Sequence record: NC_091964.1
Direction: 5' to 3' (one strand)
Length of the DNA: 64,000 nucleotides
Part shown: in pieces, positions 15,964 to 52,094 of the stretch
Layout: each line of letters begins with the position of its first letter
How positions within the stretch are numbered: position 1 is the first letter of the stretch
Translations under genes and position numbers: made by a program
Notes under the pieces: model-generated
The model's input: the letters and a program-made list of their open reading frames with translations, nothing else
Told to the model about the DNA's origin: nothing
The model's database searches: none

Positions 15964-17146
15964 TAATATCAACCTCTTCGTCTAAGGCCCCGGACTTATA
16001 GCCGTAGGTAGGGTTAGCCATTGCACTACCATCCGCACCATCATTCAGCTTCTCTGGGCTAATAGTAATGTTCTGTTGAAGCTCACGAGCGATTTCATTA
16101 TAACGCTCAGATTCCATGAACCACATCAGTTCCCAGGTTACCGGATGAATAAGCGGGTAGCACTCGTAGTTGTAGTAGTCGAGATAGGCGTTAGGGATTT
16201 GAACATAACGCTCACCGCGAGCAAGTTTCATTTTACCGTCTAATAACGCAGCAATTCCGCTTGCATCATTATCAATGAGTTCCAGGTCGCGGTTAAACAA
16301 CCCGACTGTCTGGTTAAACTCCCACGGTAGGATAGGATCGTTGTACTGTGCCCCAACAGAACGGAACTGAATGTTGACCTTATCATTACTACGGTCAAAG
16401 TTCTCAGCTGAACTGAAGTTGGCAATTGCACCCCACGGGTTAGTCTTCGGATACATATATCCGTTGGCCATGATGTGCTGTACGAAACGACGTGACGGGT
16501 CCATGATCAATCGGTACATGCGCATGGTGTAATCCATACGGTTCTCGATGTTGTTATCCGCATACGGCACCATGGTGATCCCGAGCACGTTCTCCATATA
16601 GATGAGCATCGTATCCAAAATCTTAAGTACCGGAGCACCCTCGGTATTCACGAATGAACACGTAAGATCAAAAGCTCCGCGGTAACGATAATAACCGTCC
16701 GCCATCGCTATCGCTTCACCCATGATACCTTCAGGCTCAACATAGTCAGCCATCGTGTTATCGGGCCATCCTGATACGTCAGAGATGGTATTAGTAAGGA
16801 TAGTAAGGAACGCATGGTTATTATTAATTATCGGCGTACCGTAACCATTATTGACACAATGAGGATCAAGCAGTGCACGTATAGCACGCTGGATCGTGTA
16901 TTGGTTACCAGTGAGCAAAGGACTGAGATACCTATCTTGTGATAGATTCTTGTCCGTCAGGTTGAGTTCTGGCCGTGTAATAAAAGTGTAACCAACCTGA
17001 TCAGTGTTAGCGGGCGTAGCCAAACCGTTAGCGCGGAAATTGTAGCCACGGAACATATCGTAGGCTTGGCCCTTATATGTACCGTAACCCATGCTCCGAC
17101 TAAGCTGGTCTAGGCTGCGCCGGAATTCTTCTTCTCTCGAACCCAT
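15956..17146 (-). CDS. Virion structural protein, tail tube/baseplate-like (phiKZ gp88-like)
   Basis: FITRPELNL and related motifs; start MGSREEE at 17146 after RBS GAGGA, which removes the apparent overlap with the divergent gene. Confidence 0.65.
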   Translation of the reverse strand: MGSREEEFRRSLDQLSRSMGYGTYKGQAYDMFRGYNFRANGLATPANTDQVGYTFITRPELNLTDKNLSQDRYLSPLLTGNQYTIQRAIRALLDPHCVNNGYGTPIINNNHAFLTILTNTISDVSGWPDNTMADYVEPEGIMGEAIAMADGYYRYRGAFDLTCSFVNTEGAPVLKILDTMLIYMENVLGITMVPYADNNIENRMDYTMRMYRLIMDPSRRFVQHIMANGYMYPKTNPWGAIANFSSAENFDRSNDKVNIQFRSVGAQYNDPILPWEFNQTVGLFNRDLELIDNDASGIAALLDGKMKLARGERYVQIPNAYLDYYNYECYPLIHPVTWELMWFMESERYNEIARELQQNITISPEKLNDGADGSAMANPTYGYKSGALDEEVDING

Positions 17147-31281: not shown

Positions 31282-31860
31282 ATGCAAGTTAAACCCATAT
31301 TGACCTTGAAGGTTGCTGTAGTGCCTTCATGGTTCAATGAGATCGTGGTGTTGGAGAAAATCCCGCTTGAGGACTTGAGCTCCTTCAATAAGTTGTACAC
31401 GTACGCCGAGCAAAACAAATGTTCGAAAGAAGAAGTGTATGGCTATATCATGGCCAATGCTCGCCTCGTGAAAATGTTTGGTGATGTTTTTGCTGACTTG
31501 TATATGATAGGTCAGTGCGATGAAAATTTATCGTTCACTAAAAACCATCAGGCTGGCATCGATATTTTCCAGGCTCTTCTGAACGAGGAAGAGGCTGTTA
31601 AAAAATTGGAGTCTTCAAACAAAGACGAAGATTCCTCGATTTTCAAAACCAGACCCAACCTGCTCGAGAAAGAGCATTATATTCCTAAATTGGTTCAAGG
31701 GGATACTTTGCTACTTATCGGCAGCCCGACGCAAGCTTATAAAAACAAGCGTGCTTTCTATAATGCCACCATTGAATGTGTACACAAAGCTTTACCCTTC
31801 GAGCTTCTGAAGCGCACCAATTTAATGAGGCACTATTTACGACATGCCGTAGACGAGTGA
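31282..31860 (+). CDS. Hypothetical protein upstream of MCP, about 192 aa
   Basis: RBS AGGAGG before ATG 31282; TATG at 31253-31256. Confidence 0.75.
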   Translation: MQVKPILTLKVAVVPSWFNEIVVLEKIPLEDLSSFNKLYTYAEQNKCSKEEVYGYIMANARLVKMFGDVFADLYMIGQCDENLSFTKNHQAGIDIFQALLNEEEAVKKLESSNKDEDSSIFKTRPNLLEKEHYIPKLVQGDTLLLIGSPTQAYKNKRAFYNATIECVHKALPFELLKRTNLMRHYLRHAVDE

Positions 31861-31877
31861 CCGTCCGGGCCTGTTTA

Positions 31878-31912
31878 TATGTAATGCGCTCACAGTTTAG
31901 ATATACTGTGAG
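31878..31912 (+). promoter_or_regulatory. Candidate late promoter (TATG) and 5'-UTR hairpin of the MCP gene
   Basis: TATG 31878-31881 in AT-rich context; inverted repeat CTCACAGT (31889-96)/ACTGTGAG (31905-12). Confidence 0.55.
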
Positions 31913-31948
31913 TAAATACACCCTTAATCGATTAAGGAAATACCAACG

Positions 31949-34282
31949 ATGATTCGTTCTAATAATCGCAATAACGCGACCAAGACGTTCAACAACGTCA
32001 TGGACTCCATCCGTACCACCATCACCGGCGGTCTTAACGTTCTGCCGCAGAAAGATAAAGTCAGCCTCATTGGTGTTTCCGTAGAAAGCTACGGCCAGGA
32101 CGGTGCGGCAATCTTTGACAGCGCGATCGACCATCTGGAGAAAGGCTTCCAGTCTATCTCTCAGGAAGCGTTCAAGCTGGACGAAGAGATGGCCCGTGGC
32201 GCTGGTGAAAACACCAACAAGCAAGGCGGTCTGCACTACACCAGCCTGGCTGACCAGGACTGGATGCGTCAGCGCCAGCTGGAAGTTTCTGTAGAAGCTG
32301 CAACCATTCTGGGCCTGGCTCACAATGGCGTCGGCAAATACATGAACATCAAGCCGCGTGAGTTTGATTCTGAAACTCGCCTGAACCAGCTGAACACCGC
32401 TGGTAACTGGGGTCGTATCCCGGTAGTTGGCGAAGACGCTCGTCCGTCTATGGAATCCTTCGACGAAACCGAAACCGAAAAATGGCGCGAATTCTCGTAT
32501 GCTGTCAACCTGATGGCCGCGAAAACTCACCCGTTTGCTGAGCTGTTCTATCCGCTGTACGTGACCACTCCGGAAAACGCCGGTTGGCTGATGACCATCC
32601 GCCGCACCATGGTGTGGGAAGGTTACCAGCAGACCACTCTGGACGGCCGCGCGGTTGAGCTGAAGAAAACCAACGCCCTCGAAGCGCTGCTGAACCACAA
32701 AATCCTGGAAACGGATTCTACCCGTCTTTATCCGGTCCTGACCGATGAAAACAAAGACTGGTTCGTGCCGGACACCATCGTCGCGCCGCAGCCGAAAACC
32801 CAGGGCGAAGATAAGTTTGAAACTCAGTACCTGAAGTTCAACACTGCTCACAGCTTCAACCTGATCAACCTGGCGCAGACCCCGAGCCGCATGTCGAAGG
32901 GTGCACCGAACTTCACCGACTCTCTGGACCGCCGTATCGCGCTGGACGAAGTCGTTCTGAAAATCGGCGATGACACTGTTATCATCAACGTTAACCGTGA
33001 CAGCTACGCTCAGTTCCTGGCACCGCGCGAATATAACTTCCGTGACATGACCGTGAAGTTCCATCCGGGCGCAAACCAGGGCCACGGCATCAGCCTGAAA
33101 CCTGAAAACCTGAACACCAAAGACGAAGTCCCTGCTTCTCTGAAAGCGCTCTTCGACAAAGGTATCGGTCTGGAATTCCAGATGAAGGTCGATGGTGAGA
33201 TCAACGTTGAATCTGGTAACGGCCAGGTCCGCGTAGCGAACGCGCAGTTCACCACCGCATTCCGTCTGGATAAGCCGGAAGAGAAAATTGCTCTGGACGA
33301 CGCTGAAGTTAAAGCGCTGGTTCCGGCCAAGTTCTCTGCGGAAGGCTTCAGCCTCGAAGCACGTCTGACCAACCTTAACCAGCTGGAGCGTGGTAAACTG
33401 GTTGACTCCGATGTGCAGAAAGAAGGCTTCATCATCCCGACCCTGTCGCCGATCTGTATCGTTAAACCGAGCCAGATGGAAGATGAGAAAGTCTATCCGA
33501 AAATCGAGTCGCTGCAATTCGTTTACCGCACCATGCTGCGTAACGACGCCGTTACCTCCCTGCTGAACCGCGCCGATACTCTGGAGTCCTATCTGGGCAA
33601 CGGTATCACCCACGGCCTGGAAAGCAACCTGGGTATGGAAGGTCTGGGACAGTACTACTACCGTCCGCACTTTGAGCGCATCAAGATCAACGTTGCGCAA
33701 GAGCTGAACAACCTGACCTCGGCTAACAAGCTGGGCGACATTCAGGGCCTGATCGTCTCTCGCATGAACGAAGTGATCTACCGCGTAAACAAAGTAACCG
33801 GCTACAGCGCCGCGCTGGAAGAGCAGTTCCCTGGCTCTACTCCTAAGCCGCACGTTGCAATCGGTACTGACCTGTACCTGCCGCAGTTCCTGATGATTCA
33901 GGGCGACGACCGTACCGTAGCCATCGGCTTCGACCACACCATCGCGTCAATCTCTGACCTGCGTATGAGCAACAAGATCGTCATGCAGTTTACTCTGCCG
34001 GGCGAGAAAGAACCTCATCCGATGCAGTCCGGCGTTTGCGGCATGATCCCTGAGTATCTGGCTAACTTCCAGATGATCCGTGATCAGCGTATCAACACCG
34101 AAATGCGTCTGACGCCGCGTTACCGTTACTTCAACTTCACCCCGGTCATGATCGTGATCGAGATCGAAGGTCTGGAAGAAGCGGTTGCACAGCGTACCGC
34201 GATGAACGTCAATGAGAAAGCTGTAACCGCTTTCCCTGGCGAGCCGGTTGCTCCGACTCCTCCGGTAACCGACGGCGAGTGA
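31949..34282 (+). CDS. Major capsid protein precursor (phiKZ gp120-like)
   Basis: 777 aa, extreme codon bias, propeptide with VSVE/ISQE/VSVE/PSME sites, position between DnaB and nvRNAP beta genes; ends in Pro-rich PGEPVAPTPPVTDGE. Confidence 0.9.
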   Translation: MIRSNNRNNATKTFNNVMDSIRTTITGGLNVLPQKDKVSLIGVSVESYGQDGAAIFDSAIDHLEKGFQSISQEAFKLDEEMARGAGENTNKQGGLHYTSLADQDWMRQRQLEVSVEAATILGLAHNGVGKYMNIKPREFDSETRLNQLNTAGNWGRIPVVGEDARPSMESFDETETEKWREFSYAVNLMAAKTHPFAELFYPLYVTTPENAGWLMTIRRTMVWEGYQQTTLDGRAVELKKTNALEALLNHKILETDSTRLYPVLTDENKDWFVPDTIVAPQPKTQGEDKFETQYLKFNTAHSFNLINLAQTPSRMSKGAPNFTDSLDRRIALDEVVLKIGDDTVIINVNRDSYAQFLAPREYNFRDMTVKFHPGANQGHGISLKPENLNTKDEVPASLKALFDKGIGLEFQMKVDGEINVESGNGQVRVANAQFTTAFRLDKPEEKIALDDAEVKALVPAKFSAEGFSLEARLTNLNQLERGKLVDSDVQKEGFIIPTLSPICIVKPSQMEDEKVYPKIESLQFVYRTMLRNDAVTSLLNRADTLESYLGNGITHGLESNLGMEGLGQYYYRPHFERIKINVAQELNNLTSANKLGDIQGLIVSRMNEVIYRVNKVTGYSAALEEQFPGSTPKPHVAIGTDLYLPQFLMIQGDDRTVAIGFDHTIASISDLRMSNKIVMQFTLPGEKEPHPMQSGVCGMIPEYLANFQMIRDQRINTEMRLTPRYRYFNFTPVMIVIEIEGLEEAVAQRTAMNVNEKAVTAFPGEPVAPTPPVTDGE

Positions 34283-41485: not shown

Positions 41486-44314
41486 TTAAGCGGAAGGAGC
41501 TGATGGCTCGGAAGGAGCCGCGGGAGCATCTCCTGCGTTAGCATCTGGACTTGCTGCCTCAGGCGAAGCAGGCTCAGCCGCTGGTTCATTATCCGTTGGT
41601 TCCGGATTATCCTCAGACGGGTTGTCTTCAGTGCTATTATCATCATCCATGCCCGGAGGCATTTCCATAGAGAAACTATCGTCGTCTTCACCACCACCGT
41701 CGTTATTGTCGTCGGTAGAAGTATCAGAGCTAGAACCACCGCTAGTACCATTACGGATTGCATCCGCGTACTGTTGGTTACGTTTCTCGAGGTTTTCGAG
41801 ATACAGTTCACGACGAAGTTTAACTGCGGCACCCCAGTCACCGAGGTTGGTGATAAGGTTGGTGATATGCAGGATAACTTCTTTAGAGATGTCAAGTGCA
41901 GGACTATCTTCTGTACCTTTACGAGTAAGCTCGGCCAGTTCAGGGAAGATATTGTTTTCCAGCATGTAGTTACGGATATAGTAAGCTTTAACCGATGCGA
42001 GTACCTGGTTGAGGTAGTTGCTATCGTTGTCGTTACCAGCCAGATCCATGAAGTCAGAGGAGATCCACGCCGCCAACGCAACGTCAAGACCCTGAACGTA
42101 CTTGTTCAGTTGTTCCATCTGAGTATCAAGTTTGGTGTTCTCAGGAGATGGGAGCTTAATCTCCAGTACACGGAAGAACTCTTCGATAATGTTATCGTAA
42201 AGTACGCCATGTGAACCATCTTCGCCGCCACGCTCCAGATACTGAGCAGGGATCTTATCCTTAGCTGCGTCAATGATGTTCTGCAACTCATGGATAATTG
42301 TACCGGAACTGTAAGAATAGATCGTCACGTAATCGCTTAAGAAAGATTCAGTGATTTTCTGTAAGTTCTTGATACGTTTGGCGAAGAGCTGGTTAGTAGT
42401 CCAACGAGTAATCGCAAAGTCAGCCGACTGAGTCGCATCCACCATTTCCGGGGTTACGTAGAAGCCCATGTAGACCTGCTTCTCCAAACGATCCATGAAG
42501 TCATTATCAATGATCTGTTTATTGGAGTTGAAGTCCTCTACGTTTACCGAGGTATTAGGGATACGAGTGTTGCCCTGGATATCGAAGATGATACCCATCT
42601 GACGAATAACACGGAACATCTCCGCAGACGACGCTACATCAGTTGGCGTTGCGCCACCTTGAGCACGTAAGAACTCGTCTTGCAGAATAGCCGCAGATTT
42701 CTCTGGGTCCGGATCACGTTCGTCGATGTTGATCGTTACACGGGTTCTACCCACTGCATTTCGAATAGACGCCATGAAGTTAGCGAAGTTACACATCGTA
42801 CGGAGTGTAGCAACTTGCTTAACGCCATCCAGCATGGAAACGCCCATACCGTTTTCGTCGTACTCGTAGGCAAGGTATGCAACCTGATCTGCTGCCAAGA
42901 AGACGATGTGAGTCATCTCGTTAGAAAGCTGACGCATGAACATCAAACGCATGATGTCTTCGTCGTGCTTCATCTTAACAGACATACCACGCAGGCCGTT
43001 CTTAATACGGTTCAACAGCTGAAGTTCCATCACATCAGAGAAGATGCGGAGACGTTCTGCTGTACCTGTATCTTTATCGACACAGTACCCGTTTTGCATG
43101 ACGTTAATCTGCTGCAACATCGCAGTAGTTTGGTCCGTCATGGCGGTGCCCTGCATGGAGGCAATACCCTGTTCCTGAAAACGCTTCAGTTCTTGTGTAA
43201 CATTAAGTGGTTGCCCGAAGCCATCAGTAATCACGTAATAGCCGATGTGGCGTTTCGGGTTACCTGGTACAAATACCGGGATGGTAGATTCGTTAAGTAG
43301 AGGAATCACCAACGGATGGCCGATAGAGCTCCTGGAAGCCTCGTGAGAGCTTCGTACGATCGAAGTGTTACCATAGGAGCTACGGCGACTACGATTCGAG
43401 TTACGAGGGTTATAGAGCGATCTCTGGATACGCTCAATATTCCGAGCCAATGCTACCTTATCTTCTTCACCTGTCGCAGCAGATTCGCTCGAGACACGAG
43501 GGATTCGACCAGCAGGGTGATTGAGAGAAAGACGGCTACGCATCTTCGCTCGGTTAAAGGCCGCATTCAGTTCCGGCAGACGCAACTGAGCAGGGTTATC
43601 CGTAATGAAGATATTATCGGTAATCTTCTGGTTAACGGTAGTTGCCAGCGAATACATCTCGAAGCTTGGAACCTGTGCAGAATGAGTAGGGTTCTCAGGC
43701 CCGCCCAGAATGCCTTTTGATTTGAGGATTCCTGCTTTCACATCGAAGAATTCACTGTTAACAGATTCTTGCCACGCTTCGTTCGAAACGCGGGAGGTTT
43801 TGTTAATCAGATCATCGAGCGACGCTTCTGGTATGATACCCCAGATAGACGCACCACGGTTAACGAGAGCATCTGCGATCATGTCGCTGAGTTCTTCGCC
43901 GAGGTTATGGTCTGTACTGAAGTGCTGACTTACCGGTTCAATCATGGTGTTGAGTAACGACAAGGGTAAATCAGAATCGTTTACCTTGAAGAATAAGTCG
44001 TCATCTTCCATGGACAAAGGTGAGCGAATACACGACACCAACGTTTCACGGATTAATTTAATATCCGGGTTCAAACGTAAGATCGTATCCGCGTCCATGT
44101 TTTTCTTGGCGCGGGTCTGCATCATGGTGTTGAATGCAGTATCGTCGGTTACAGCTACACCATCGTCTTTTGGGAGTTCGCCCGGACGCCGCCGATCAGG
44201 GATTAGCTTTGACGCAATAACTGAAGCGGAAGGATTGTCTTTAAAGAAATCAGACTTCCCGCTTCTTACTCGACTAATTCTCGAGTTTATACCAATAGGT
44301 TTCAACAATTCCAT
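41486..44314 (-). CDS. Portal protein (phiKZ gp129-like) with acidic C-terminal tail
   Basis: 942 aa; GRTRVTINIDERDPDP and AITRWTTNQLFAKRIKNLQ resemble T4 gp20-type portal motifs; VSNE/PSFE/VSSE sites; synteny. Confidence 0.75.
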   Translation of the reverse strand: MELLKPIGINSRISRVRSGKSDFFKDNPSASVIASKLIPDRRRPGELPKDDGVAVTDDTAFNTMMQTRAKKNMDADTILRLNPDIKLIRETLVSCIRSPLSMEDDDLFFKVNDSDLPLSLLNTMIEPVSQHFSTDHNLGEELSDMIADALVNRGASIWGIIPEASLDDLINKTSRVSNEAWQESVNSEFFDVKAGILKSKGILGGPENPTHSAQVPSFEMYSLATTVNQKITDNIFITDNPAQLRLPELNAAFNRAKMRSRLSLNHPAGRIPRVSSESAATGEEDKVALARNIERIQRSLYNPRNSNRSRRSSYGNTSIVRSSHEASRSSIGHPLVIPLLNESTIPVFVPGNPKRHIGYYVITDGFGQPLNVTQELKRFQEQGIASMQGTAMTDQTTAMLQQINVMQNGYCVDKDTGTAERLRIFSDVMELQLLNRIKNGLRGMSVKMKHDEDIMRLMFMRQLSNEMTHIVFLAADQVAYLAYEYDENGMGVSMLDGVKQVATLRTMCNFANFMASIRNAVGRTRVTINIDERDPDPEKSAAILQDEFLRAQGGATPTDVASSAEMFRVIRQMGIIFDIQGNTRIPNTSVNVEDFNSNKQIIDNDFMDRLEKQVYMGFYVTPEMVDATQSADFAITRWTTNQLFAKRIKNLQKITESFLSDYVTIYSYSSGTIIHELQNIIDAAKDKIPAQYLERGGEDGSHGVLYDNIIEEFFRVLEIKLPSPENTKLDTQMEQLNKYVQGLDVALAAWISSDFMDLAGNDNDSNYLNQVLASVKAYYIRNYMLENNIFPELAELTRKGTEDSPALDISKEVILHITNLITNLGDWGAAVKLRRELYLENLEKRNQQYADAIRNGTSGGSSSDTSTDDNNDGGGEDDDSFSMEMPPGMDDDNSTEDNPSEDNPEPTDNEPAAEPASPEAASPDANAGDAPAAPSEPSAPSA

Positions 44315-44338
44315 AACAAATCCTTAATGGGGGCTCGT

Positions 44339-46684
44339 ATGGCTTTCACCACACAGGCGCTCTATATAGAACAGGTAATTCAGTTAGCTCGTTCGGTGAT
44401 CATTAAACTTGATAGCGCTGCTGAAGTAATGAATAAGTACCTCGTCAGTATAGGGAAGACCGTTGACGCGAACGATCCTAAGTCCTGGATCTACTATCGT
44501 CACTTGGCAGGATTATACCATCCGACAGACAAAGTGATGAAAATCACCTCATTGGACACCCTTGAGGAAATTGAGTTCACATACGATAATCTCAAATATC
44601 ACCGCGCTACTTTTAATGCGTATCGGTCGAAAGGGGATTTCTATAAGTCGCTGGTAGCTTTATATCCAGAGCAGGTAGATTTAATCAACGGGATACTCAA
44701 CCCCGTAGACATCAACATAGCAATTAACGTTCCCAACTTCACCGTCTTAGCACTCGACACGAACTTGGTAAACGCGAATGAAACAAACTTAGTTGATGAA
44801 TTGCAGAAGTATGTCACCGGCTTTAGCGATAGCTGGTATAACCACAACTACTGCTATCTGTTCGACGAGTATCCGGCGATCTTCTTGAACACGCTGTATA
44901 CCACGTTACCAAGTGCCATTTTAAATATCCGTAAGAATAACATCCGTACGGAATATGTGCATGACTATCATCTTTGGGCTTACCTGGGTTCACATCAGCG
45001 AATCGATAAGTATCGCGATTACCTGACACGTGAACAAGCGATGTGGCTGTACCGTAACATCTCTTATCTGGAAGCTCACCCTGGCTGGAACCATTCCTTC
45101 ACCGAATTGATCGAGTGGCTCCTGACTAAGCGAACGATTCCTATCACCTCCTTCGAGTTAACGCATAACCTGGAGAAGCTGGGCGAAACTATTTCGCCTA
45201 GTACGGAAATCGTTAAGCGACCACTCAACAAGTACGCTTATAGCTCTGCTGGTTTAAAGAAAGAAACCATCGAAGCTACGCTTAATAAAGAAACATCACT
45301 TGCCCCGGCTAACAAAGATTATTACGCCGAGCAGATAGTGGCGGTCCCAGAGAAATTTAAACTTTCACCTTTCTCATCTCTTGAGACGAAAGTCCTTGAG
45401 TCAGATATGGTGGATAGAAGCGATGCGCAGCCAGTTCACTTCATTAACACCGTGTTCAATGAATGGATGTACTTAGCTTCTACCGGACGTTATACCGCAA
45501 ACATCACGCTGACCAATCCGTACACATCGGAAGTATTGTCGATGACGGCGAAAGAAGCAGTGATCGTTTGGTTGTACTGTTTGCATCGTATGCTGGACGT
45601 AGAGATTGATGTAGTCCCTACTTTCTTGGCGCACGATGTGATGCGACCGATCTCTCCTCGTTATACTGAACTACGCGACATGTCTCCGCGTATGTACGTT
45701 TCTGAAGAGATGATCCTGGCAGTAATGGATGAGTTCGTACCGCAAGGTCAGATTATCTCAGTGGAGAAATTCACCGAGGTCGTCACTAACATCCATAACG
45801 CCGTGGGTGCGATGCGTTACCTTTATGCTACTCAGGAGTCTTTCCATATCCGTGGGCATTTGGAGAACGTTGTTAAGCGCATGTTCATGGAGCACCGTTG
45901 TACTTTCACCGAAGGTATTACGTATTACTCCGACTTCTTCCAGCTGAAAGGTTGGAAGATGGACAAGATGACCAATATCCAATATCAGGACTTTGCTAAC
46001 CAGATCTTTGTTCAATCCACCGGACTTGATCTGAAAAACATCAACTCAGTGCGTGCTATCCAGCAGGCCATGATTCAGTTGATGCAACAGCTGAGTTCTT
46101 ACAGTATCCAGTTCCTGTCCCGTATTACCGACAGCTCTGCTACTGTGTTGGATTTCCCAGTAATCCGCGTAGGCGATGTCGATAACTCTTCTACTATAGA
46201 AGCAAGGCATAAGCTGCGCACCGAAGTTCTCCGTGTATACGGTAAAGGACATTCGGCTAAAGTCTGGGATGTAGGTCACGGTGTTCAGCTGAACGATGAT
46301 CGTATTAAAGTAGAAAGCGGTTTATTGGCGACATATCCAATCACTGCTGGCTTTACATCGAGATCGCAAGTTGTCACCACACGACGCCTTAAACTACCAC
46401 TGGCCCGCATCAATCTTAAACGTGCTCCTGGTATTGCCGATACAATCGATAACCGGAAGATCGATGGCGTATGGTTATATGACATCGAAGAAGCTGGCGG
46501 GGTCCCAATTGAAGATCCTATCGAGAACAAAGCGCTCAACGACTTCTGGCCCGATCCTTTCGAGGAAGCGGGTCTTAATGTCGATGAACACGCTCTTGAC
46601 GGCATCAGGGCTTACCCGGCTTTTGGAACACTTGAACAAACGTTCCAGGACGAATCTCTTAGCGGTTTCGGCTTAAACGATTAA
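44339..46684 (+). CDS. Virion structural protein, probable baseplate wedge-like (phiKZ gp128-like)
   Basis: Divergent from the portal; start 44339 or 44327; four short C-terminal repeats. Confidence 0.7.
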   Translation: MAFTTQALYIEQVIQLARSVIIKLDSAAEVMNKYLVSIGKTVDANDPKSWIYYRHLAGLYHPTDKVMKITSLDTLEEIEFTYDNLKYHRATFNAYRSKGDFYKSLVALYPEQVDLINGILNPVDINIAINVPNFTVLALDTNLVNANETNLVDELQKYVTGFSDSWYNHNYCYLFDEYPAIFLNTLYTTLPSAILNIRKNNIRTEYVHDYHLWAYLGSHQRIDKYRDYLTREQAMWLYRNISYLEAHPGWNHSFTELIEWLLTKRTIPITSFELTHNLEKLGETISPSTEIVKRPLNKYAYSSAGLKKETIEATLNKETSLAPANKDYYAEQIVAVPEKFKLSPFSSLETKVLESDMVDRSDAQPVHFINTVFNEWMYLASTGRYTANITLTNPYTSEVLSMTAKEAVIVWLYCLHRMLDVEIDVVPTFLAHDVMRPISPRYTELRDMSPRMYVSEEMILAVMDEFVPQGQIISVEKFTEVVTNIHNAVGAMRYLYATQESFHIRGHLENVVKRMFMEHRCTFTEGITYYSDFFQLKGWKMDKMTNIQYQDFANQIFVQSTGLDLKNINSVRAIQQAMIQLMQQLSSYSIQFLSRITDSSATVLDFPVIRVGDVDNSSTIEARHKLRTEVLRVYGKGHSAKVWDVGHGVQLNDDRIKVESGLLATYPITAGFTSRSQVVTTRRLKLPLARINLKRAPGIADTIDNRKIDGVWLYDIEEAGGVPIEDPIENKALNDFWPDPFEEAGLNVDEHALDGIRAYPAFGTLEQTFQDESLSGFGLND
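46428..46681 (+). repeat. Four tandem degenerate peptide repeats at the C-terminus
   Basis: IADTIDNRKIDGVWLY / IEDPIENKALNDFWP / LNVDEHALDGIRAYP / LEQTFQDESLSGFGL. Confidence 0.65.
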
Positions 46685-46696
46685 CGGAGTTAAATA

Positions 46697-47566
46697 ATGG
46701 CGAGTACTAACCCCGCTCCTAATGGGTATTATAACCGCCCAAGTGATGACTTGTGGTGGGCGATCTTCACTCGCGACAACCCTCGTATTGACTATCAGCA
46801 GAACCAAGTGCGCGTATCGCAAATGTTACCGAATGATTCCGGTGATGTTAAGCGCAACACAAAGGGTAAGCTGGTCGCTATTCCTGGGATGGGTCGTGAG
46901 GGCGAGGAATGGTTAACCTGGAACCGTCCTTACATGGAAGAACTCTTTAAAGATAAAGAGGTCTGGATTCCACCGAATAACCAACATACCCTCAGTGAAC
47001 TGATCGACACGTTCAACCAGATCTGGAAATTCCAGTTATCTGCACGTGACTTCTACGATCAGAACATTGAGATCACAACGCTACCTGCTACTTTCCAGGT
47101 AGTGATGCGACCAACCTGTTTGTGTTTCCAGGGTACGCTTACTCTCCATGTAGGTAACCCGAAGGTACATATTGGCGAAGTCATTATTAACCGTGATCTT
47201 GCAGGGCTGCAATACCCGACCGATCAGAGAGTAAAAGCTCAGGGTCCTTTAATGGTCTTCGAGCGTAACTTTACCTTCGCCGGTCAAACCCTGAAAGAGA
47301 AGTTTGGTTATGATGACCTTATCTCTGCGGACCAGTTAGACATTCTCAACGATCTGTTCGAACAGCAATGGACAATGAGCAATGCGACCAGTGACTGGAA
47401 CTTACAGGGGGCGACAGTAGTCTATAACGGACCTGCTATCGATTCCCCATCGCCGTGTAACACCGATTACGAAAACGTTCTCCTTATTCAGTTGGATGAC
47501 GTCTTGTGCGGTAATGTAGCCGGGCACCTTAATCTCCACTACAACGTTATTAAGGCTCCTAAATAG
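46697..47566 (+). CDS. Virion structural protein, baseplate-region paralog family
   Basis: N-terminal beta domain, IINRDLAGLQYP motif, C-terminal LQGATVVYNGP domain. Confidence 0.7.
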   Translation: MASTNPAPNGYYNRPSDDLWWAIFTRDNPRIDYQQNQVRVSQMLPNDSGDVKRNTKGKLVAIPGMGREGEEWLTWNRPYMEELFKDKEVWIPPNNQHTLSELIDTFNQIWKFQLSARDFYDQNIEITTLPATFQVVMRPTCLCFQGTLTLHVGNPKVHIGEVIINRDLAGLQYPTDQRVKAQGPLMVFERNFTFAGQTLKEKFGYDDLISADQLDILNDLFEQQWTMSNATSDWNLQGATVVYNGPAIDSPSPCNTDYENVLLIQLDDVLCGNVAGHLNLHYNVIKAPK

Positions 47567-47609
47567 TTTGAGGAAGTAACCTCAACTCCGACCTTATAAG
47601 GAAACTATC

Positions 47610-48164
47610 ATGTTGAAAATCGATCTTAGCAAAACCTCTAAGGAACTGCTCTACGCAGTACTGACCGAGACTGCTGGTAAGGCTATCACTGATAAAGACG
47701 TTAGCTTCGCCAACATCGCCTCCATCCAGGGTGCACAAGCAGGTCAGCCGAACGCTACCGTGGAACTTAGCTCTGTCGCTAACTCCACTGTAGTTAAACC
47801 TGGCGGCACTGAGCCCCTGACCCGTAAAGTAACTCGCCATACTCTGGCGGAGTGCGCTACGGCGTTGGCAGTTGACCTGACTATCGATGACGACATCACG
47901 CAGTACGATACTGCGAGCTATGTCGTTGCGAAAGTTAACAGTCTCCTGGGTTCTGTTCTGACCGAAGCGGAAGTTACTGTTAGCGCCGCGGCCGCCGATA
48001 ACGGCGTACGTGAAGTTACTGTTTCCATGAAAGACGGTGCCCACATCGCACTGCATGGCGACCTCGTTCTGATCGTTACGGATAATGTCGACCATCGCTC
48101 GACGGTGGAAGGCACATTTCCCGGAGACGACCTGAGTGGCTTCGACCAACCGGCCTCAGCCTAA
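47610..48164 (+). CDS. Virion structural protein, short member of the same family
   Basis: RBS AAGGA; ends TFPGDDLSGFDQP. Confidence 0.65.
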   Translation: MLKIDLSKTSKELLYAVLTETAGKAITDKDVSFANIASIQGAQAGQPNATVELSSVANSTVVKPGGTEPLTRKVTRHTLAECATALAVDLTIDDDITQYDTASYVVAKVNSLLGSVLTEAEVTVSAAAADNGVREVTVSMKDGAHIALHGDLVLIVTDNVDHRSTVEGTFPGDDLSGFDQPASA

Positions 48165-48178
48165 CGGCTAATTAAGAC

Positions 48179-48213
48179 GAGAGGAGGGGCAACCCTCCTC
48201 TCTCTTTTGCCGT
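48179..48213 (+). terminator. Terminator hairpin
   Basis: GAGAGGAGGG-GCAA-CCCTCCTCTC then TTTTGCCGT; TATG at 48218-48221. Confidence 0.8.
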
Positions 48214-48258
48214 ATTTTATGTCGACGACACACCCTTTCCTTATAAGGAGCCATTTCG

Positions 48259-49242
48259 ATGGACAGTACTGAAATTGAAGCCACAAAGATCAATAGCGTG
48301 ACGACGCGTACGATCTGGGGTGCGCTGATGCAAACCTGTCAGTTTGCACACTTTAAAATTCCTGCTATTCAGTATATCTCAATGAATGAACGCCTTGAGA
48401 TTCTGAAAGACCGTAAACCGCCTGCCGGACAATGGCCTTTCTTCCAGTACTGGGTAATTGGTGATAAAGGGCACATCCAACGTATCGATGCAACCGATCA
48501 GGAAACGTATATTGACGAAGCGAAACATGACGGCGATCACGCTGCTCCGTTCCGTCCAATTCCGTTCGTAATGCGCCCGGAAGGTTCTGACCTCACCGAA
48601 GCCGAACGTAAGAAGTACATTCTTCGTAAGAAGGAGAACTTCAACAACGTTGATTACTGGTGCTATTACGGGATGCGTATCCCTGGCATCACTGATGTTG
48701 TACCGACTGTCTATATGACAACGGTTAAAGACGGCGTGGGCACGACCAAAGAGTACGAAACGTCCAACGCCAACATCTACCCACAGCAGAAAGTCATCGC
48801 ACCGGATCAGTCGGTTACGACCTCCCCTGACACTCTGTCTGTATCGGCCGCGCTTACGATCGATTTTAACCCGAACGATGCGCAAGAACTCATCAACGTT
48901 GCGAAGATCCGTTACAATGGTAATGAGAAACGCGCGGTGATCTCCGAAATCGGTTTGTGCACCGGATTGGATACCGGCGGTATTCAGACCGAGACTGACG
49001 GTGGTGCACCGATCATGTTCAATGAAGCGATCTCTGTTTGGATCTCTGCTTTCATCTCGACATTCCAGTCACTTGCCTTTAACAACAAAGGCTTTAAAGT
49101 TGAACTGGAACTCGGTGCTACCGAACCCGTCACCACTGGTAGCGAAGTACCTGACGCACAGGCTGTTGACGCGCTTAACAATGCACGTCTCTCCCGCCTG
49201 TCCAGCAGTGGTATCGCTGCTACAGTTAAGCTTAACAATTAG
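48259..49242 (+). CDS. Virion structural protein (phiKZ gp139-like)
   Basis: RBS AAGGAG; YWVIGDKGH, YWCYYG and SEIGLCTG motifs as recalled for this family. Confidence 0.6.
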   Translation: MDSTEIEATKINSVTTRTIWGALMQTCQFAHFKIPAIQYISMNERLEILKDRKPPAGQWPFFQYWVIGDKGHIQRIDATDQETYIDEAKHDGDHAAPFRPIPFVMRPEGSDLTEAERKKYILRKKENFNNVDYWCYYGMRIPGITDVVPTVYMTTVKDGVGTTKEYETSNANIYPQQKVIAPDQSVTTSPDTLSVSAALTIDFNPNDAQELINVAKIRYNGNEKRAVISEIGLCTGLDTGGIQTETDGGAPIMFNEAISVWISAFISTFQSLAFNNKGFKVELELGATEPVTTGSEVPDAQAVDALNNARLSRLSSSGIAATVKLNN

Positions 49243-49254
49243 TAGGGAGCACCC

Positions 49255-50172
49255 ATGGAACTTTTCTTTAAAGATCCTATCGTCCAGATTATCGACGAGC
49301 TCAACGCGAAGAACAGCACAACGCTGAAGCGACCGTTGACCGTTAACGATCTGACCTTTACCGAGGTTAGTAGCAACGAAGATACAGGCGCACGTGAAGT
49401 GATCGCTCGCCCTGCATCTGGCGCCGAGTACTTCGGTATCATCCGTAATCCGGGCATCACGTACCATCGTTACGTCGGTACTAAGATGTTCGTCGTTCAG
49501 CCGCGTATTTGGGGCGTGAAGGGTGAAACGTACCCTGACCTTATCCAACGCATGGCCCAGTTGTATAATCTGCCTCCGTTCACTATCGAACCTAAAGCCG
49601 GTGATACAACTAAGCCGTACGACTTCGGTAAAGAAGTTCATGACCAGAAGATCGACCAGGGCGACGACTGGCTTAACTTCACGATGCAGATCTCCTTCCA
49701 TGCAAGTTCTCTTGGCTGGGTAGGAATGTTCCCGATCGTCGTGTACAACGCAGAGCGTGACCTTGGTAAGATTATCAAGGATACCGCACTTGATGCGCTG
49801 GCTTATCCTGACGATACCGAAGGTAGCGCGGGCTCGATGTCTACCCTGACCTATCCGATCGAATTTGAGCTACCTGCAAGCGCGCAGGCGACGTTGTCTA
49901 CTGTTGGCAGTAAGTTAGCCAGCGATGTTAATGACGACACCGTCAAGGCCATTATCGATCAGATTCTGGAGTACTACGAATTCAGCATCCCAAGTGATGC
50001 TCGCGATTCTCTTGAATCTACGGTGCCAGGATCCACTGTTCTGACCACTAACCTGGGCGACAGTGCGCAGACTAGCAAGCAAGTTGTTCTTCAGATGACA
50101 AGTCCGTCAGGGGCTTCTCCGATGTTCGTCGGTAAGATCTACCTGAACAACCCTTCCTTCAGTCCTGCCTAA
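49255..50172 (+). CDS. Virion structural protein, baseplate-region paralog family
   Basis: RBS GGGAG; LGKIIKDTALDALAYP motif. Confidence 0.68.
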   Translation: MELFFKDPIVQIIDELNAKNSTTLKRPLTVNDLTFTEVSSNEDTGAREVIARPASGAEYFGIIRNPGITYHRYVGTKMFVVQPRIWGVKGETYPDLIQRMAQLYNLPPFTIEPKAGDTTKPYDFGKEVHDQKIDQGDDWLNFTMQISFHASSLGWVGMFPIVVYNAERDLGKIIKDTALDALAYPDDTEGSAGSMSTLTYPIEFELPASAQATLSTVGSKLASDVNDDTVKAIIDQILEYYEFSIPSDARDSLESTVPGSTVLTTNLGDSAQTSKQVVLQMTSPSGASPMFVGKIYLNNPSFSPA

Positions 50173-50184
50173 GGTAAGTAATTG

Positions 50185-50218
50185 AAAGAGGAAGGGGCTA
50201 GTGCCCCTTCCTCTTTTT
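50185..50218 (+). terminator. Terminator hairpin
   Basis: AAAGAGGAAGGGGC-TAGT-GCCCCTTCCTCTTT; TATG at 50220-50223. Confidence 0.82.
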
Positions 50219-50249
50219 CTATGTTAACCTCAACTCAAGGGCTATTTAA

Positions 50250-50606
50250 ATGATTTCCCAGAAATTTTTATACTTGCTCGCTGAGGCCTGTCATGAAGCA
50301 ACGAAAGTTATTTCAGAACAAATCCTCTCCGAAGAGAAGAAAGAATGGAAGCTAATCGATTCTGCTACTAAGGCTCGCCTAATCAATGCGGTACGTCGTG
50401 CCATTGATGATAAAGTAACAGATCCAGCTATCGCCCATGCTAACTGGGTGACGGATATGGAAAAGGATGGTTGGCAATTCGGCGATGAGTTTAGCGAAGA
50501 AAATAAAACACATCCTTGTATGGTTCCTTATGGTGAGTTAGAAGTTGGTCAACAGACTAAAGATTACATCTTCCTCTCCATCCTGAAGCCATTCTACTAT
50601 CTGTAA
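50250..50606 (+). CDS. RyR (ryanodine-receptor repeat) domain protein
   Basis: AHANWVTDMEKDGWQFGDEFSEENKTHPCMVPYGELEVGQQTKD fits the RyR consensus H..W......GW.YG......K.HP.LVPY..L....K.KD. Confidence 0.88.
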   Translation: MISQKFLYLLAEACHEATKVISEQILSEEKKEWKLIDSATKARLINAVRRAIDDKVTDPAIAHANWVTDMEKDGWQFGDEFSEENKTHPCMVPYGELEVGQQTKDYIFLSILKPFYYL

Positions 50607-50618
50607 CCGGGAGGGACC

Positions 50619-52094
50619 ATGAGTCTCATTACTCCAGAATGGCGGGTGGTTCTGACTGATCACATCAATCGGAAGTACAAAACCTCCCTTAAGCCAGCTG
50701 CTCTTTTGTTCGAGCACAACCGTTACTACACTCCCATTACTGGTTGCCGAATTATCGACGTTTTACCAGGCGACGGGACTCTCCAGGGACGTGGGACATT
50801 ATTCATCAAACCGCGGGATCCTAAAAAGTATTTTCTTAATATCCCGGTTGTTATTTACCCTGACAGCGATCTTACTGGTTCTGAACTTATCGATCTCTTA
50901 GGTCAGAAGTATGGGATCGTATTCGATAAAGCAGTCGATATCGAACAATCGTTCTTGAACTCGAAGATTACGCTCGGCGGACAGCAAACCATTGCTATTC
51001 CGTTTAAAGCAGATTCGTTTGTTTGGGACGGTACGTTAGATATCGTTATCGCCGACAGCGGACTTAACCTTCCTACTGCTGTTAAGAACCGTGAGCTCGA
51101 TGCACTGATCATCCCGGATATTACTGATAAGAACACTCAGTCACTACAGCTTCTGACTGCACCTATTGTTATCAGTGATAAGACACTGGTACGTAAGTTC
51201 AGTGGCTCTGGTCCTGTTCTGATCGAAGGTAATATTCTCGATCGCCTGATGGTGGAAATTCAGTCTCAGTTTATCGTGGATAATTCTGACCTGGGCGGAT
51301 TACGCGATCTCTTCACCAACGTCGAGTTTGTTTCCGTCGAAACCGAAGAGAGCGATTACGATCGTTACATGACATCGATTGATTCATTGGCGAACGATAA
51401 GTTCTCTGGCTATCCGCGTTTCCGTTTCAAATCAGTGGTCATCGAAGACGACATCCAGAGCGTCGTAGGAGAGATTGTCGTTAAAGACCTGCCTGACCCA
51501 TCAGGACTGAAGATGACGTCCTTCCTGGTAGCTACAGGCGACTATAGCGGCAGTTACATGGCTAACCTTCTTAATGCTCAGGCAGAGAAGTATCCTGAGC
51601 GTGCAGATGGTATCCGGGAAGTCATTGATGCGATGTTCGGTGAGGAAGGTTTGTTTGAACCTATGGACCGCAGCGGTGCTTATGCACAACTGTCCACAGG
51701 TAAAGCAACAGTCTACGTACCAACCCGTGAGGGCTCTGGCTGGACCGGTCGCTTAGCAATTACTTTCCCGATGCCTACCTTCGCAATTGAAGACGAGTCT
51801 CAGAAAGATCTGGAAACTGAAGACGGTGCTGATGTACTTAACCTTGAACACAAGTTCATTGTTGTTTACACTGCTGATGGTCAGTTGTCAGATGGTGACA
51901 TTGGGACACCTGTTAGTTCCGGTACACTTGCAGAGACTTCTCTCCTGGCGATGATGGCTTTTGACAACGATGCTAACGGCACAATGCCGAAGCTCAAGTC
52001 TACGCTGGTATCTTCGCCTATTGAAGACGGTACTGCTTACACTGAACCTGGCTGGCCTAACGTAGAAATCCACGTTAAAGAAGTCGTTCAGTAA
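50619..52094 (+). CDS. Virion structural protein, long member of the baseplate-region paralog family
   Basis: RBS GGGAGG; LPTAVKNRELDALIIP motif; internal partial repeat (DSFVWDGTLDI vs GSGWTGRLAI). Confidence 0.68.
   Translation: MSLITPEWRVVLTDHINRKYKTSLKPAALLFEHNRYYTPITGCRIIDVLPGDGTLQGRGTLFIKPRDPKKYFLNIPVVIYPDSDLTGSELIDLLGQKYGIVFDKAVDIEQSFLNSKITLGGQQTIAIPFKADSFVWDGTLDIVIADSGLNLPTAVKNRELDALIIPDITDKNTQSLQLLTAPIVISDKTLVRKFSGSGPVLIEGNILDRLMVEIQSQFIVDNSDLGGLRDLFTNVEFVSVETEESDYDRYMTSIDSLANDKFSGYPRFRFKSVVIEDDIQSVVGEIVVKDLPDPSGLKMTSFLVATGDYSGSYMANLLNAQAEKYPERADGIREVIDAMFGEEGLFEPMDRSGAYAQLSTGKATVYVPTREGSGWTGRLAITFPMPTFAIEDESQKDLETEDGADVLNLEHKFIVVYTADGQLSDGDIGTPVSSGTLAETSLLAMMAFDNDANGTMPKLKSTLVSSPIEDGTAYTEPGWPNVEIHVKEVVQ

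What the first reader, a model, noticed from the sequence alone, without database searches (positions are those of the whole stretch)
46428..51116. One short motif appears four times in the gp128-like tail and once in each of four neighbours
Seen: consensus [LI]xx[TIV][FIV]x[DN]xxL[DSA]G[FL]xxP at 46428-46681 (x4), about 47162 (HIGEVIINRDLAGLQYP), 48102 (VEGTFPGDDLSGFDQP), 49759 (LGKIIKDTALDALAYP) and 51066 (LPTAVKNRELDALIIP), plus the MCP extension. In the 289, 305 and 491 aa proteins it links an N-terminal beta domain to a second domain; in the others it is terminal. Inference: a beta-strand-donating peptide that chains subunits together, with the four-copy tail acting as a multivalent hub. 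This would be a modular assembly code for the jumbo virion.
Basis: partly seen in the sequence, partly recalled or inferred. Interest (0 to 1): 0.75.

Follow-up and report, generated by a model that had tools for sequence, protein, structure and literature searches.

The report
Shared docking motif in baseplate proteins
A 13-17 residue motif marks the linker by which a family of jumbo-phage baseplate filament proteins (DUF7941) is thought to chain head-to-tail. The same motif is repeated four times in the tail of the neighbouring baseplate wedge protein, which may therefore anchor those filaments.

Summary
The window is Serratia phage PCH45, a nucleus-forming, flagellotropic jumbo phage. All eight motif instances in 46433-51119 are real and in one ungapped register. 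The ninth, in the major capsid protein, is not supported.

The four neighbours are DUF7941 (PF25613) paralogues. Their motif is the conserved core of the DUF7941 inter-domain linker. An April 2026 preprint on phage Goslar proposes that this linker docks on the next protomer's N-terminal domain to form baseplate-anchored filaments. That part is therefore already known in kind.

The new part is the 785-aa protein, a homologue of the phiKZ gp128 baseplate wedge protein, which ends in four copies of the same motif.
- A scoring matrix built only from DUF7941 linkers of other phages finds 96 hits in the C-terminal tails of 120 gp128 homologues, against 4.2 after shuffling.
- Copy number runs from 0 to 11.
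- The reciprocal test works in 86 of 137 family members.
- One lineage fuses a DUF7941 N-terminal domain onto gp128.

This supports a multivalent anchor, but no binding was shown. Beta-strand donation is not supported, and a virion-wide code is too broad a claim. Mechanism confidence is about 0.55.

The parts
44327..46684 (+). Gene for the 785-aa baseplate wedge protein, homologue of phiKZ gp128 and Goslar gp35. GenBank starts it at 44339 (781 aa).
   Evidence: PDB sequence search: 9xqs_C PHIKZ128, E 9.5e-118, over residues 12-620 only. phrog_3222 covers 8-624. gp128 is the wedge protein in the phiKZ atlas paper PMC13250141.
46433..46681 (+). C-terminal tail of the wedge protein. It holds four motif copies (17-mers at 46433-46483, 46508-46558, 46568-46618, 46631-46681), spaced 25, 20 and 21 residues apart.
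   Evidence: for register; ranks 4, 15, about 1000, and 17 with the independent matrix; none of 20,000 shuffles reached the observed count; repeats conserved in orthologues while spacers and copy number (2-4) vary; the last 90 residues hold 20 Asp+Glu and 15 Gly+Pro.
46697..47566 (+). 289-aa full-length DUF7941 protein (N-terminal domain, linker, C-terminal domain), homologue of phiKZ gp127 and architectural equivalent of Goslar gp22. Motif at 47171-47221.
   Evidence: PF25613 E 5.6e-75. PDB 9xqd_0 PHIKZ127. Foldseek 9xqd_0 E 5e-7, TM 0.65. AlphaFold2 pLDDT 95. Motif rank 1.
47610..48164 (+). 184-aa DUF7941 N-terminal domain with a C-terminal motif only (architecture of Goslar gp23). Motif at 48105-48155.
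   Evidence: phrog_2935. Family HMM built here, E 1.3e-8. No Pfam hit. Motif rank 12. The C-terminal motif is conserved in the SPLA10 and Moabite orthologues.
48259..49242 (+). 327-aa homologue of the phiKZ gp139 / Goslar gp32 baseplate spoke protein (DUF7208). It belongs to the same module but has no motif.
   Evidence: PDB 9xpg_A PHIKZ139, E 5.4e-43. PF23838.
49255..50172 (+). 305-aa DUF7941 paralogue with a divergent C-terminal part. Motif at 49762-49812.
   Evidence: PF25613 E 7e-19. Motif rank 2.
50619..52094 (+). 491-aa DUF7941 paralogue with a long, unassigned C-terminal region. Motif at 51069-51119.
   Evidence: PF25613 E 4e-16. Motif rank 3.

Best explanation
The motif is the conserved core of the DUF7941 linker. 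It is a short peptide that follows the N-terminal domain and, in the published model for this family, docks onto the N-terminal domain of the next subunit, so that subunits polymerise head-to-tail into flexible filaments at the baseplate periphery.

PCH45 encodes each kind of piece side by side:
- Donor and acceptor subunits: the 289-aa protein (N-terminal domain, motif, C-terminal domain) and the 184-aa protein (N-terminal domain plus terminal motif, a plain chain extender).
- Two variants with other C-terminal parts: the 305- and 491-aa proteins.
- A donor-only protein: the gp128-like wedge protein. Its acidic, Gly/Pro-rich C-terminal tail offers four motif copies and has no acceptor domain.

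I infer that this tail is a multivalent anchor. With six wedges and four motifs each, it would give up to 24 start points where DUF7941 chains attach to the inner baseplate.

How firm each step is:
- Shown here: the motif is real, it equals the DUF7941 linker core, and it recurs in gp128-family tails across the family.
- Taken from the literature: the linker docks on the next N-terminal domain, and the subunits form filaments.
- Inferred only: the tail motifs bind DUF7941 N-terminal domains.
For: 1. Family assignment. PF25613 hits for the 289-, 305- and 491-aa proteins. The 184-aa protein matches the family HMM at E 1.3e-8.

2. The motif columns are conserved across about 140 representatives clustered at 50% identity:
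- position -9: Leu/Ile/Val 97%
- position 0: Leu 78%
- position +2: Gly 68%
- position +5: Tyr 72%
- position +6: Pro 76%

3. Goslar gp22, which forms filaments in the preprint, has its only hit at aa 167 (17 bits). gp23 has its hit at aa 159 (15.5 bits). Both fall in the linker that AlphaFold 3 docks on the next protomer.

4. The linker-derived matrix scores gp128 homologues unevenly. It finds 96 hits in the tails (16,158 residues) and 20 in the N-terminal parts (74,400 residues), a 22-fold enrichment. Shuffled tails give 4.2 +/- 2.2. 42 of 120 homologues have at least one hit and 14 have three or more, with up to 11 tandem copies.

5. Reciprocal test. A matrix built from 22 tandem units of two distant tails picks the linker motif as the single best 13-mer in 86 of 137 DUF7941 proteins.

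6. Gene fusion. In one lineage gp128 carries a motif followed by a DUF7941 N-terminal domain. The Pfam score is 37 bits against a cutoff of 27. The protein cluster was seen on 24 contigs.

7. Conserved synteny of portal, gp128, DUF7941, DUF7941, gp139, DUF7941 in PCH45, SPLA10, Moabite, KpLz_1_41, PhiEaH1, Goslar and phiKZ.

8. Acceptor-only proteins exist (N-terminal domain, no motif), as do proteins with two or three tandem motifs. A system that docks in trans predicts both.

9. With a deep alignment AlphaFold2 models the linker confidently (pLDDT 89-96), meaning it is packed against a domain rather than free.
Against: - No structure or binding result shows a gp128 tail touching a DUF7941 domain.
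- A HMMER local model of the linker gives the PCH45 tail only 0.3 bits.
- Tail repeat 3 fails the independent matrix, and the 184-aa protein is marginal.
- Tail copies differ systematically from linker copies. Trp is common at +4 in tails, whereas Tyr at +5 and Pro at +6 mark linkers. This could mean a different partner.
- The AlphaFold2 monomer packs the linker in cis and shows no strand there.
- phiKZ has the best-resolved peripheral baseplate, yet its gp128 tail has no motif. Its gp127 sits at the outer end of the gp139 band, not next to gp128.
- Tail motif strength correlates with neighbouring linker strength across loci (rho 0.41, p 6e-4). At the level of 21 clusters at 60% identity this is no longer significant (rho 0.39, p 0.08).
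Confidence: 0.55

Rival explanations
1. The motif is an internal structural element. In DUF7941 proteins it latches onto the protein's own domains in cis. In gp128 tails the tandem copies fold together into a repeat structure of their own, such as a short fibre or solenoid. The likeness would then reflect a shared hydrophobic pattern or common descent, not a shared binding partner.
For: The AlphaFold2 monomer with a deep alignment gives the linker pLDDT 89-96 in cis. Some tails have perfectly periodic arrays: nine 16-residue units in P0091. Spacings cluster at 16-25 residues.
Against: Tails have no DUF7941 domain in cis, except in the fusion lineage. Copy number changes between close relatives, 2 to 4 within the PCH45 clade, and spacers vary in length and sequence. 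Both suit linear motifs better than a cooperative fold. The preprint's AlphaFold 3 dimers dock the linker in trans, and gp22 polymerises. Acceptor-only domains lacking any linker are common.
Confidence: 0.2
2. The motif is a docking peptide, but for a different common partner. Candidates are the gp139-like spoke protein encoded in the same cluster, another peripheral baseplate protein, or an assembly chaperone.
For: The gp139 homologue sits in the middle of the cluster. In phiKZ gp139 contacts both gp128 and gp127. Tail and linker versions of the motif differ at +4 to +6.
Against: The published predictions place the linker on the DUF7941 N-terminal domain. The gene fusion joins gp128 to that domain, not to gp139.
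Confidence: 0.15
3. The tail copies are leftovers of duplication or recombination with the adjacent DUF7941 genes and have no function of their own.
For: The genes are adjacent. Short repeats expand easily.
Against: Motif positions are kept while spacers diverge. This holds across gp128 homologues down to about 30% identity and in many host genera. Enrichment remains after the PCH45 clade is removed: 80 hits against 3.5.
Confidence: 0.05
4. Chance or composition: a loose pattern found by eye in acidic, Leu/Gly-rich sequence.
For: The MCP instance is at noise level, and HMMER misses the tail.
Against: Independent and reciprocal matrices and the shuffle controls.
Confidence: 0.02

Closest known systems
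DUF7941 (PF25613) filament proteins of chimalliviruses: Goslar gp22/gp23 and phiKZ gp126/gp127 (bioRxiv 10.64898/2026.04.21.720040)
   Same: The family, domain order and gene neighbourhood are the same. The motif lies in the linker that the preprint docks onto the next N-terminal domain. The 289-aa protein has the architecture of gp22 and the 184-aa protein that of gp23.
   Different: The preprint calls the linker disordered. It names no sequence motif, and it does not mention the gp35/gp128 tail. It assumes six peripheral anchoring sites. Here the wedge protein itself carries 0-11 copies of the motif, and one lineage fuses it to a DUF7941 domain.
phiKZ gp128 baseplate wedge protein (PDB 9xqs; PMC13250141)
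   Same: The first 620 or so residues are homologous (E 1e-117). The gene sits in the same place next to the portal gene. A homologue of its wedge partner gp87 is present in the window.
   Different: The phiKZ gp128 tail has no motif. PCH45 has four, Goslar gp35 has two significant copies, and others have up to eleven.
Donor-strand complementation in chaperone-usher pili (from general knowledge)
   Same: The logic matches: a short peptide from one subunit occupies a site on the next, giving a polar head-to-tail polymer with distinct initiator, extender and terminator subunits.
   Different: No incomplete immunoglobulin-like fold was found and no strand is predicted at the motif. There is no evidence of a chaperone or usher.
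Multivalent scaffolds such as cellulosomal scaffoldins (from general knowledge)
   Same: One anchored protein recruits several copies of modular partners through a repeated interaction unit.
   Different: Here the scaffold would carry short linear peptides and the partners the folded domain, the reverse of cohesin-dockerin. Binding is not shown.

Membership tests
DUF7941 (PF25613) | Match to the Pfam model above its gathering score | tested here: met
   The 289-aa protein scores 252.8 bits, the 305-aa protein 68.8 bits and the 491-aa protein 59.7 bits, against a cutoff of 27. The 184-aa protein has no Pfam hit. It matches phrog_2935 and a family HMM built here at E 1.3e-8.
DUF7941 (PF25613) | N-terminal domain with the fold of the phiKZ gp127 N-terminal domain | tested here: met
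   Foldseek of the AlphaFold2 model (pLDDT 95) finds 9xqd_0 as the only significant hit, at E 5e-7 and TM 0.65 on the target. Tested for the 289-aa protein only.
DUF7941 (PF25613) | Conserved linker after the N-terminal domain | tested here: met
   The motif falls in profile columns 161-176, which are conserved in about 140 representatives. The three Pfam-positive paralogues rank 1 to 3 in the window.
DUF7941 (PF25613) | Head-to-tail oligomers or filaments | not testable with these tools
   Only single-chain prediction was available. The claim rests on the preprint's AlphaFold 3 dimers and on negative-stain EM of Goslar gp22.
phiKZ gp128-type baseplate wedge protein | Sequence homology to the solved wedge protein, and conserved position next to the portal gene | tested here: met
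   9xqs_C at E 9.5e-118 and the Goslar chain at E 5e-114. The portal homologue is at 41486-44314. Synteny was seen in seven phages.
phiKZ gp128-type baseplate wedge protein | Heterotrimer with two copies of a gp87-type protein | not testable with these tools
   The partner gene is present at window 13024-15981(-), matching PHIKZ087 at E 3e-118. Assembly itself was not tested.
Donor-strand exchange polymers (pilin-like) | Incomplete immunoglobulin-like fold completed by a donated beta strand | tested here: not met
   DSSP on the model shows a helical turn at 159-162 and then coil through 180. There is no pilin-like structural match. Cis or trans packing could not be inspected.
Array of short linear motifs on a disordered scaffold | Short conserved motif in a variable, compositionally biased tail, with changing copy number | tested here: met
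   Motif columns are kept and spacers diverge. Copy number runs 0-11. The tail is rich in Asp/Glu and Gly/Pro. Disorder itself was not predicted.

The most novel reading that the evidence does not exclude
The C-terminal tail of the gp128-family wedge protein is the missing baseplate anchor for the DUF7941 filament cloud of chimalliviruses. It is an array of 0-11 docking peptides whose copy number sets how many filaments start at each wedge. Four kinds of protein (donor-only, acceptor-only, extender and multi-motif brancher) would then form a small assembly grammar for a branched host-capture net. In flagellotropic PCH45 that net could serve to catch flagella.
Probability: 0.45. Interest if true: 0.65.

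Novelty: new variant of a known kind. Interest (0 to 1): 0.55.

Why it matters
The Goslar preprint left open how thousands of DUF7941 subunits per virion are attached. [quoted passage not shown] A motif array on each of the six wedge proteins would multiply the start points and shorten the expected filaments. It would also explain why the copy number of a tail repeat varies between close relatives.

The work gives a precise, searchable sequence signature for donor sites in any chimallivirus genome. The anchoring question can be tested on existing maps and proteomes without new biology. For PCH45, whose primary receptor is the flagellum, it points to candidate host-capture proteins.

Tried and rejected
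- A HMMER local model of the linker columns finds only two of the eight instances. I relied on ungapped matrices with shuffle controls instead, and I report the discrepancy.
- AlphaFold2 with an 11-sequence alignment gave a poor model (pLDDT 57, linker below 50). It was redone with 118 sequences.
- Mutual-information coupling between motif columns and the domains was dominated by gap artefacts and told nothing.
- The locus-level correlation between tail and linker motif strength lost significance after clustering.
- The MCP instance was rejected. A better-scoring hit nearby lies on the antisense shadow ORF of the MCP gene.
- A search for further gp128-DUF7941 fusions found only one lineage.
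- The extended data tables of the PCH45 Tn-seq and proteomics preprint are not held as text.
- Multimer prediction of tail peptide with domain was not available.
- One search was a mistaken reference and gave nothing.
These were recalled from memory, went into no tool, and support no conclusion.
Full report
**Identity of the window.** The region is 100% identical to Serratia phage PCH45 (MN334766.1), and window coordinates equal genome coordinates. In GenBank every gene in the stretch is a 'hypothetical protein'. PCH45 is a nucleus-forming jumbo phage whose primary receptor is the flagellum (PMC11797060).

**Gene content.** Searches against solved structures and family libraries give the following.
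- 41486-44314(-) is the portal, matching phiKZ gp129 and Goslar gp36.
- 44327-46684(+) is the homologue of phiKZ gp128. The match is E 9.5e-118 but covers residues 12-620 only. In the phiKZ structural atlas gp128 is the baseplate wedge protein, which forms a heterotrimer with two gp87 (PMC13250141). The gp87 homologue is also in the window, at 13024-15981(-).
- The 289-, 305- and 491-aa proteins are DUF7941 (PF25613) above threshold.
- The 184-aa protein is a shorter member, shown by phrog_2935 and a family HMM at E 1.3e-8.
- The 327-aa protein between them is the gp139/gp32 spoke protein.

The order portal, gp128, DUF7941, DUF7941, gp139, DUF7941 recurs in SPLA10, Moabite, KpLz_1_41, PhiEaH1, Goslar (gp36 to gp31) and, in shortened form, phiKZ (gp129 to gp126).

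**The observation.** All eight instances in the cluster are present and align without gaps. In the 289-, 305- and 491-aa proteins they fall in the same alignment columns, just after the N-terminal domain. The pattern fitted to them is over-represented (12 hits against 0.9 expected), but that test is circular.

For an independent model I searched 1.84 billion cluster representatives with a profile of the 289-aa protein's orthologues. This gave 334 hits, of which 150 were fetched. I then extracted the linker columns. Shares by column across about 140 diverse members:
- hydrophobic at -9: 97%
- hydrophobic at -5: about 82%
- Leu at 0: 78%
- Gly at +2: 68%
- Tyr at +5: 72%
- Pro at +6: 76%

An ungapped matrix from these 134 linkers contains no wedge-protein tail. 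Among 44,651 six-frame positions it ranks the three Pfam-positive paralogues 1 to 3, tail repeats 1, 2 and 4 at ranks 4, 15 and 17, and the 184-aa protein at rank 12. Tail repeat 3 fails. Over the whole 212-kb genome the same six sites stay within the top 13 of 111,646 positions. A fifth DUF7941 gene with a non-canonical linker appears at 138743-139594.

A HMMER local version of the model sees only the 289- and 305-aa proteins clearly. The MCP instance is at noise level and lies inside the capsid fold.

[quoted passage not shown] It reports AlphaFold 3 predictions in which one protomer's linker (and C-terminal domain) docks on the next protomer's N-terminal domain. It shows filaments of purified gp22 and fits a gp126-gp127 heterodimer into phiKZ peripheral-baseplate density. 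It proposes a baseplate-anchored 'fiber cloud' with six anchoring sites.

The motif is exactly in that linker. It is the only strong hit in Goslar gp22 (aa 167, 17 bits) and in gp23 (aa 159, 15.5 bits). That part is therefore not new. The preprint defines no sequence motif and says nothing about the gp35/gp128 tail. No other paper in the library treats DUF7941 assembly.

**The wedge-protein tail.** I applied the linker-derived matrix to 120 gp128 homologues.
- It gives 96 hits in the tails and 20 in the much longer N-terminal parts, a 22-fold difference in density.
- Shuffled tails give 4.2 +/- 2.2. After the PCH45 clade is removed the figures are 80 against 3.5.
- 42 of 120 homologues have at least one copy, and some have 9 or 11 in tandem.
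- Spacings are mostly 16-25 residues.
- Within the PCH45 clade the motif positions are kept while spacers diverge, and copy number varies from 2 to 4.

The reciprocal test also works. A matrix built from 22 units of two distant tails, defined by their own periodicity, picks the linker motif as the single best 13-mer in 86 of 137 DUF7941 proteins. Chance would give about one.

Goslar gp35 has two significant tail copies with a tail-derived matrix, and phiKZ gp128 has none. In one lineage the wedge protein ends in a motif followed by a DUF7941 N-terminal domain. The Pfam score is 37 bits against a cutoff of 27, and the cluster was seen on 24 contigs. This fusion links the two proteins physically.

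**Structure.** With a 118-sequence alignment AlphaFold2 gives the 289-aa protein a mean pLDDT of 95 and a pTM of 0.69. The model has a mixed alpha/beta N-terminal domain (to about residue 152), a C-terminal domain (from about 181) and a confidently modelled linker (pLDDT 89-96). The linker contains one helical turn and no strand. Its only significant structural match is the phiKZ gp127 N-terminal domain.

I could not inspect contacts or run multimers. The model shows that the motif is a packed element rather than a free spacer, but it cannot tell cis from trans packing. It gives no support for beta-strand donation.

**Interpretation.** The cluster encodes a donor-and-acceptor system.
- Many phages have N-terminal-domain-only proteins without a motif, which would be acceptors or caps. 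phiKZ gp126 is one of these.
- Others have a domain plus terminal motif, which would be extenders. Examples are the PCH45 184-aa protein and Goslar gp23.
- Some have two or three tandem motifs, which would be branch points. Moabite's 382-aa protein is one.
- The wedge-protein tail is donor-only.

A system that docks in trans predicts this distribution. A purely internal latch does not. I therefore rate the multivalent-anchor reading as the best explanation, at about 0.55.

**Main reservations.**
- There is no contact evidence.
- Tail and linker versions of the motif differ systematically at +4 to +6.
- The monomer model packs the linker in cis.
- phiKZ lacks the tail motif altogether.
- The co-variation between tail and linker is not significant at cluster level.

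The motif is confined to the baseplate-periphery module.

Noticed in passing
window 50250-50606 (+): A 118-aa protein with a RyR domain (PF02026, 33.6 bits) sits inside the baseplate-periphery cluster. It is conserved at the same place in Salmonella phage SPLA10. Its role is unknown.
   Followed up: no
window 13024-15981 (-): This is the homologue of phiKZ gp87, the wedge partner of gp128 (E 3e-118). It contains two motif-like 13-mers at aa 652 and 821, each ranked 5th, one by the 17-column and one by the 13-column matrix. They lie inside folded domains, and their conservation was not checked.
   Followed up: partly
PCH45 genome 138743-139594 (outside the window; L089): A fifth DUF7941 paralogue (E 7e-24) lies directly upstream of the 1332-aa 'tail protein I' gene. 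Its linker is non-canonical, with a best score of 2.7 bits.
   Followed up: partly
L024 7145-9679 and L043 (IMG/VR contigs of about 230 kb); protein P0283: Here the gp128 homologue is fused at its C terminus to a motif plus a DUF7941 N-terminal domain. Two further DUF7941 genes follow on the opposite strand.
   Followed up: yes
L005 14214-15362 (Moabite), L006 13960-15102 (KpLz_1_41), L007 13131-13727 (PhiEaH1): These DUF7941 paralogues have two or three tandem linker motifs and could act as branch points in a chain.
   Followed up: partly
window 31718-33946 (-) versus 31928-34279 (+): A 743-aa antisense shadow ORF overlaps the MCP gene, where GC is locally raised to 0.55. It has no family match and produces a spurious motif hit.
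   Followed up: yes
window 41486-44314 (-): This gene matches the solved portals of phiKZ (gp129, E 7e-88) and Goslar (gp36). The PCH45 Tn-seq preprint names 'gp206' as the portal. The numbering or annotation mismatch was not resolved.
   Followed up: no
window 44327 / 44339: The longest ORF of the gp128-like gene starts at 44327, whereas GenBank annotates the start at 44339 (781 aa).
   Followed up: no
proteins P0079 and P0100 (gp128 homologues, 1015-1023 aa): Their long C-terminal extensions carry a PF17803 domain and have no motif hits. The gp128 C terminus therefore looks like a general site for added modules.
   Followed up: no
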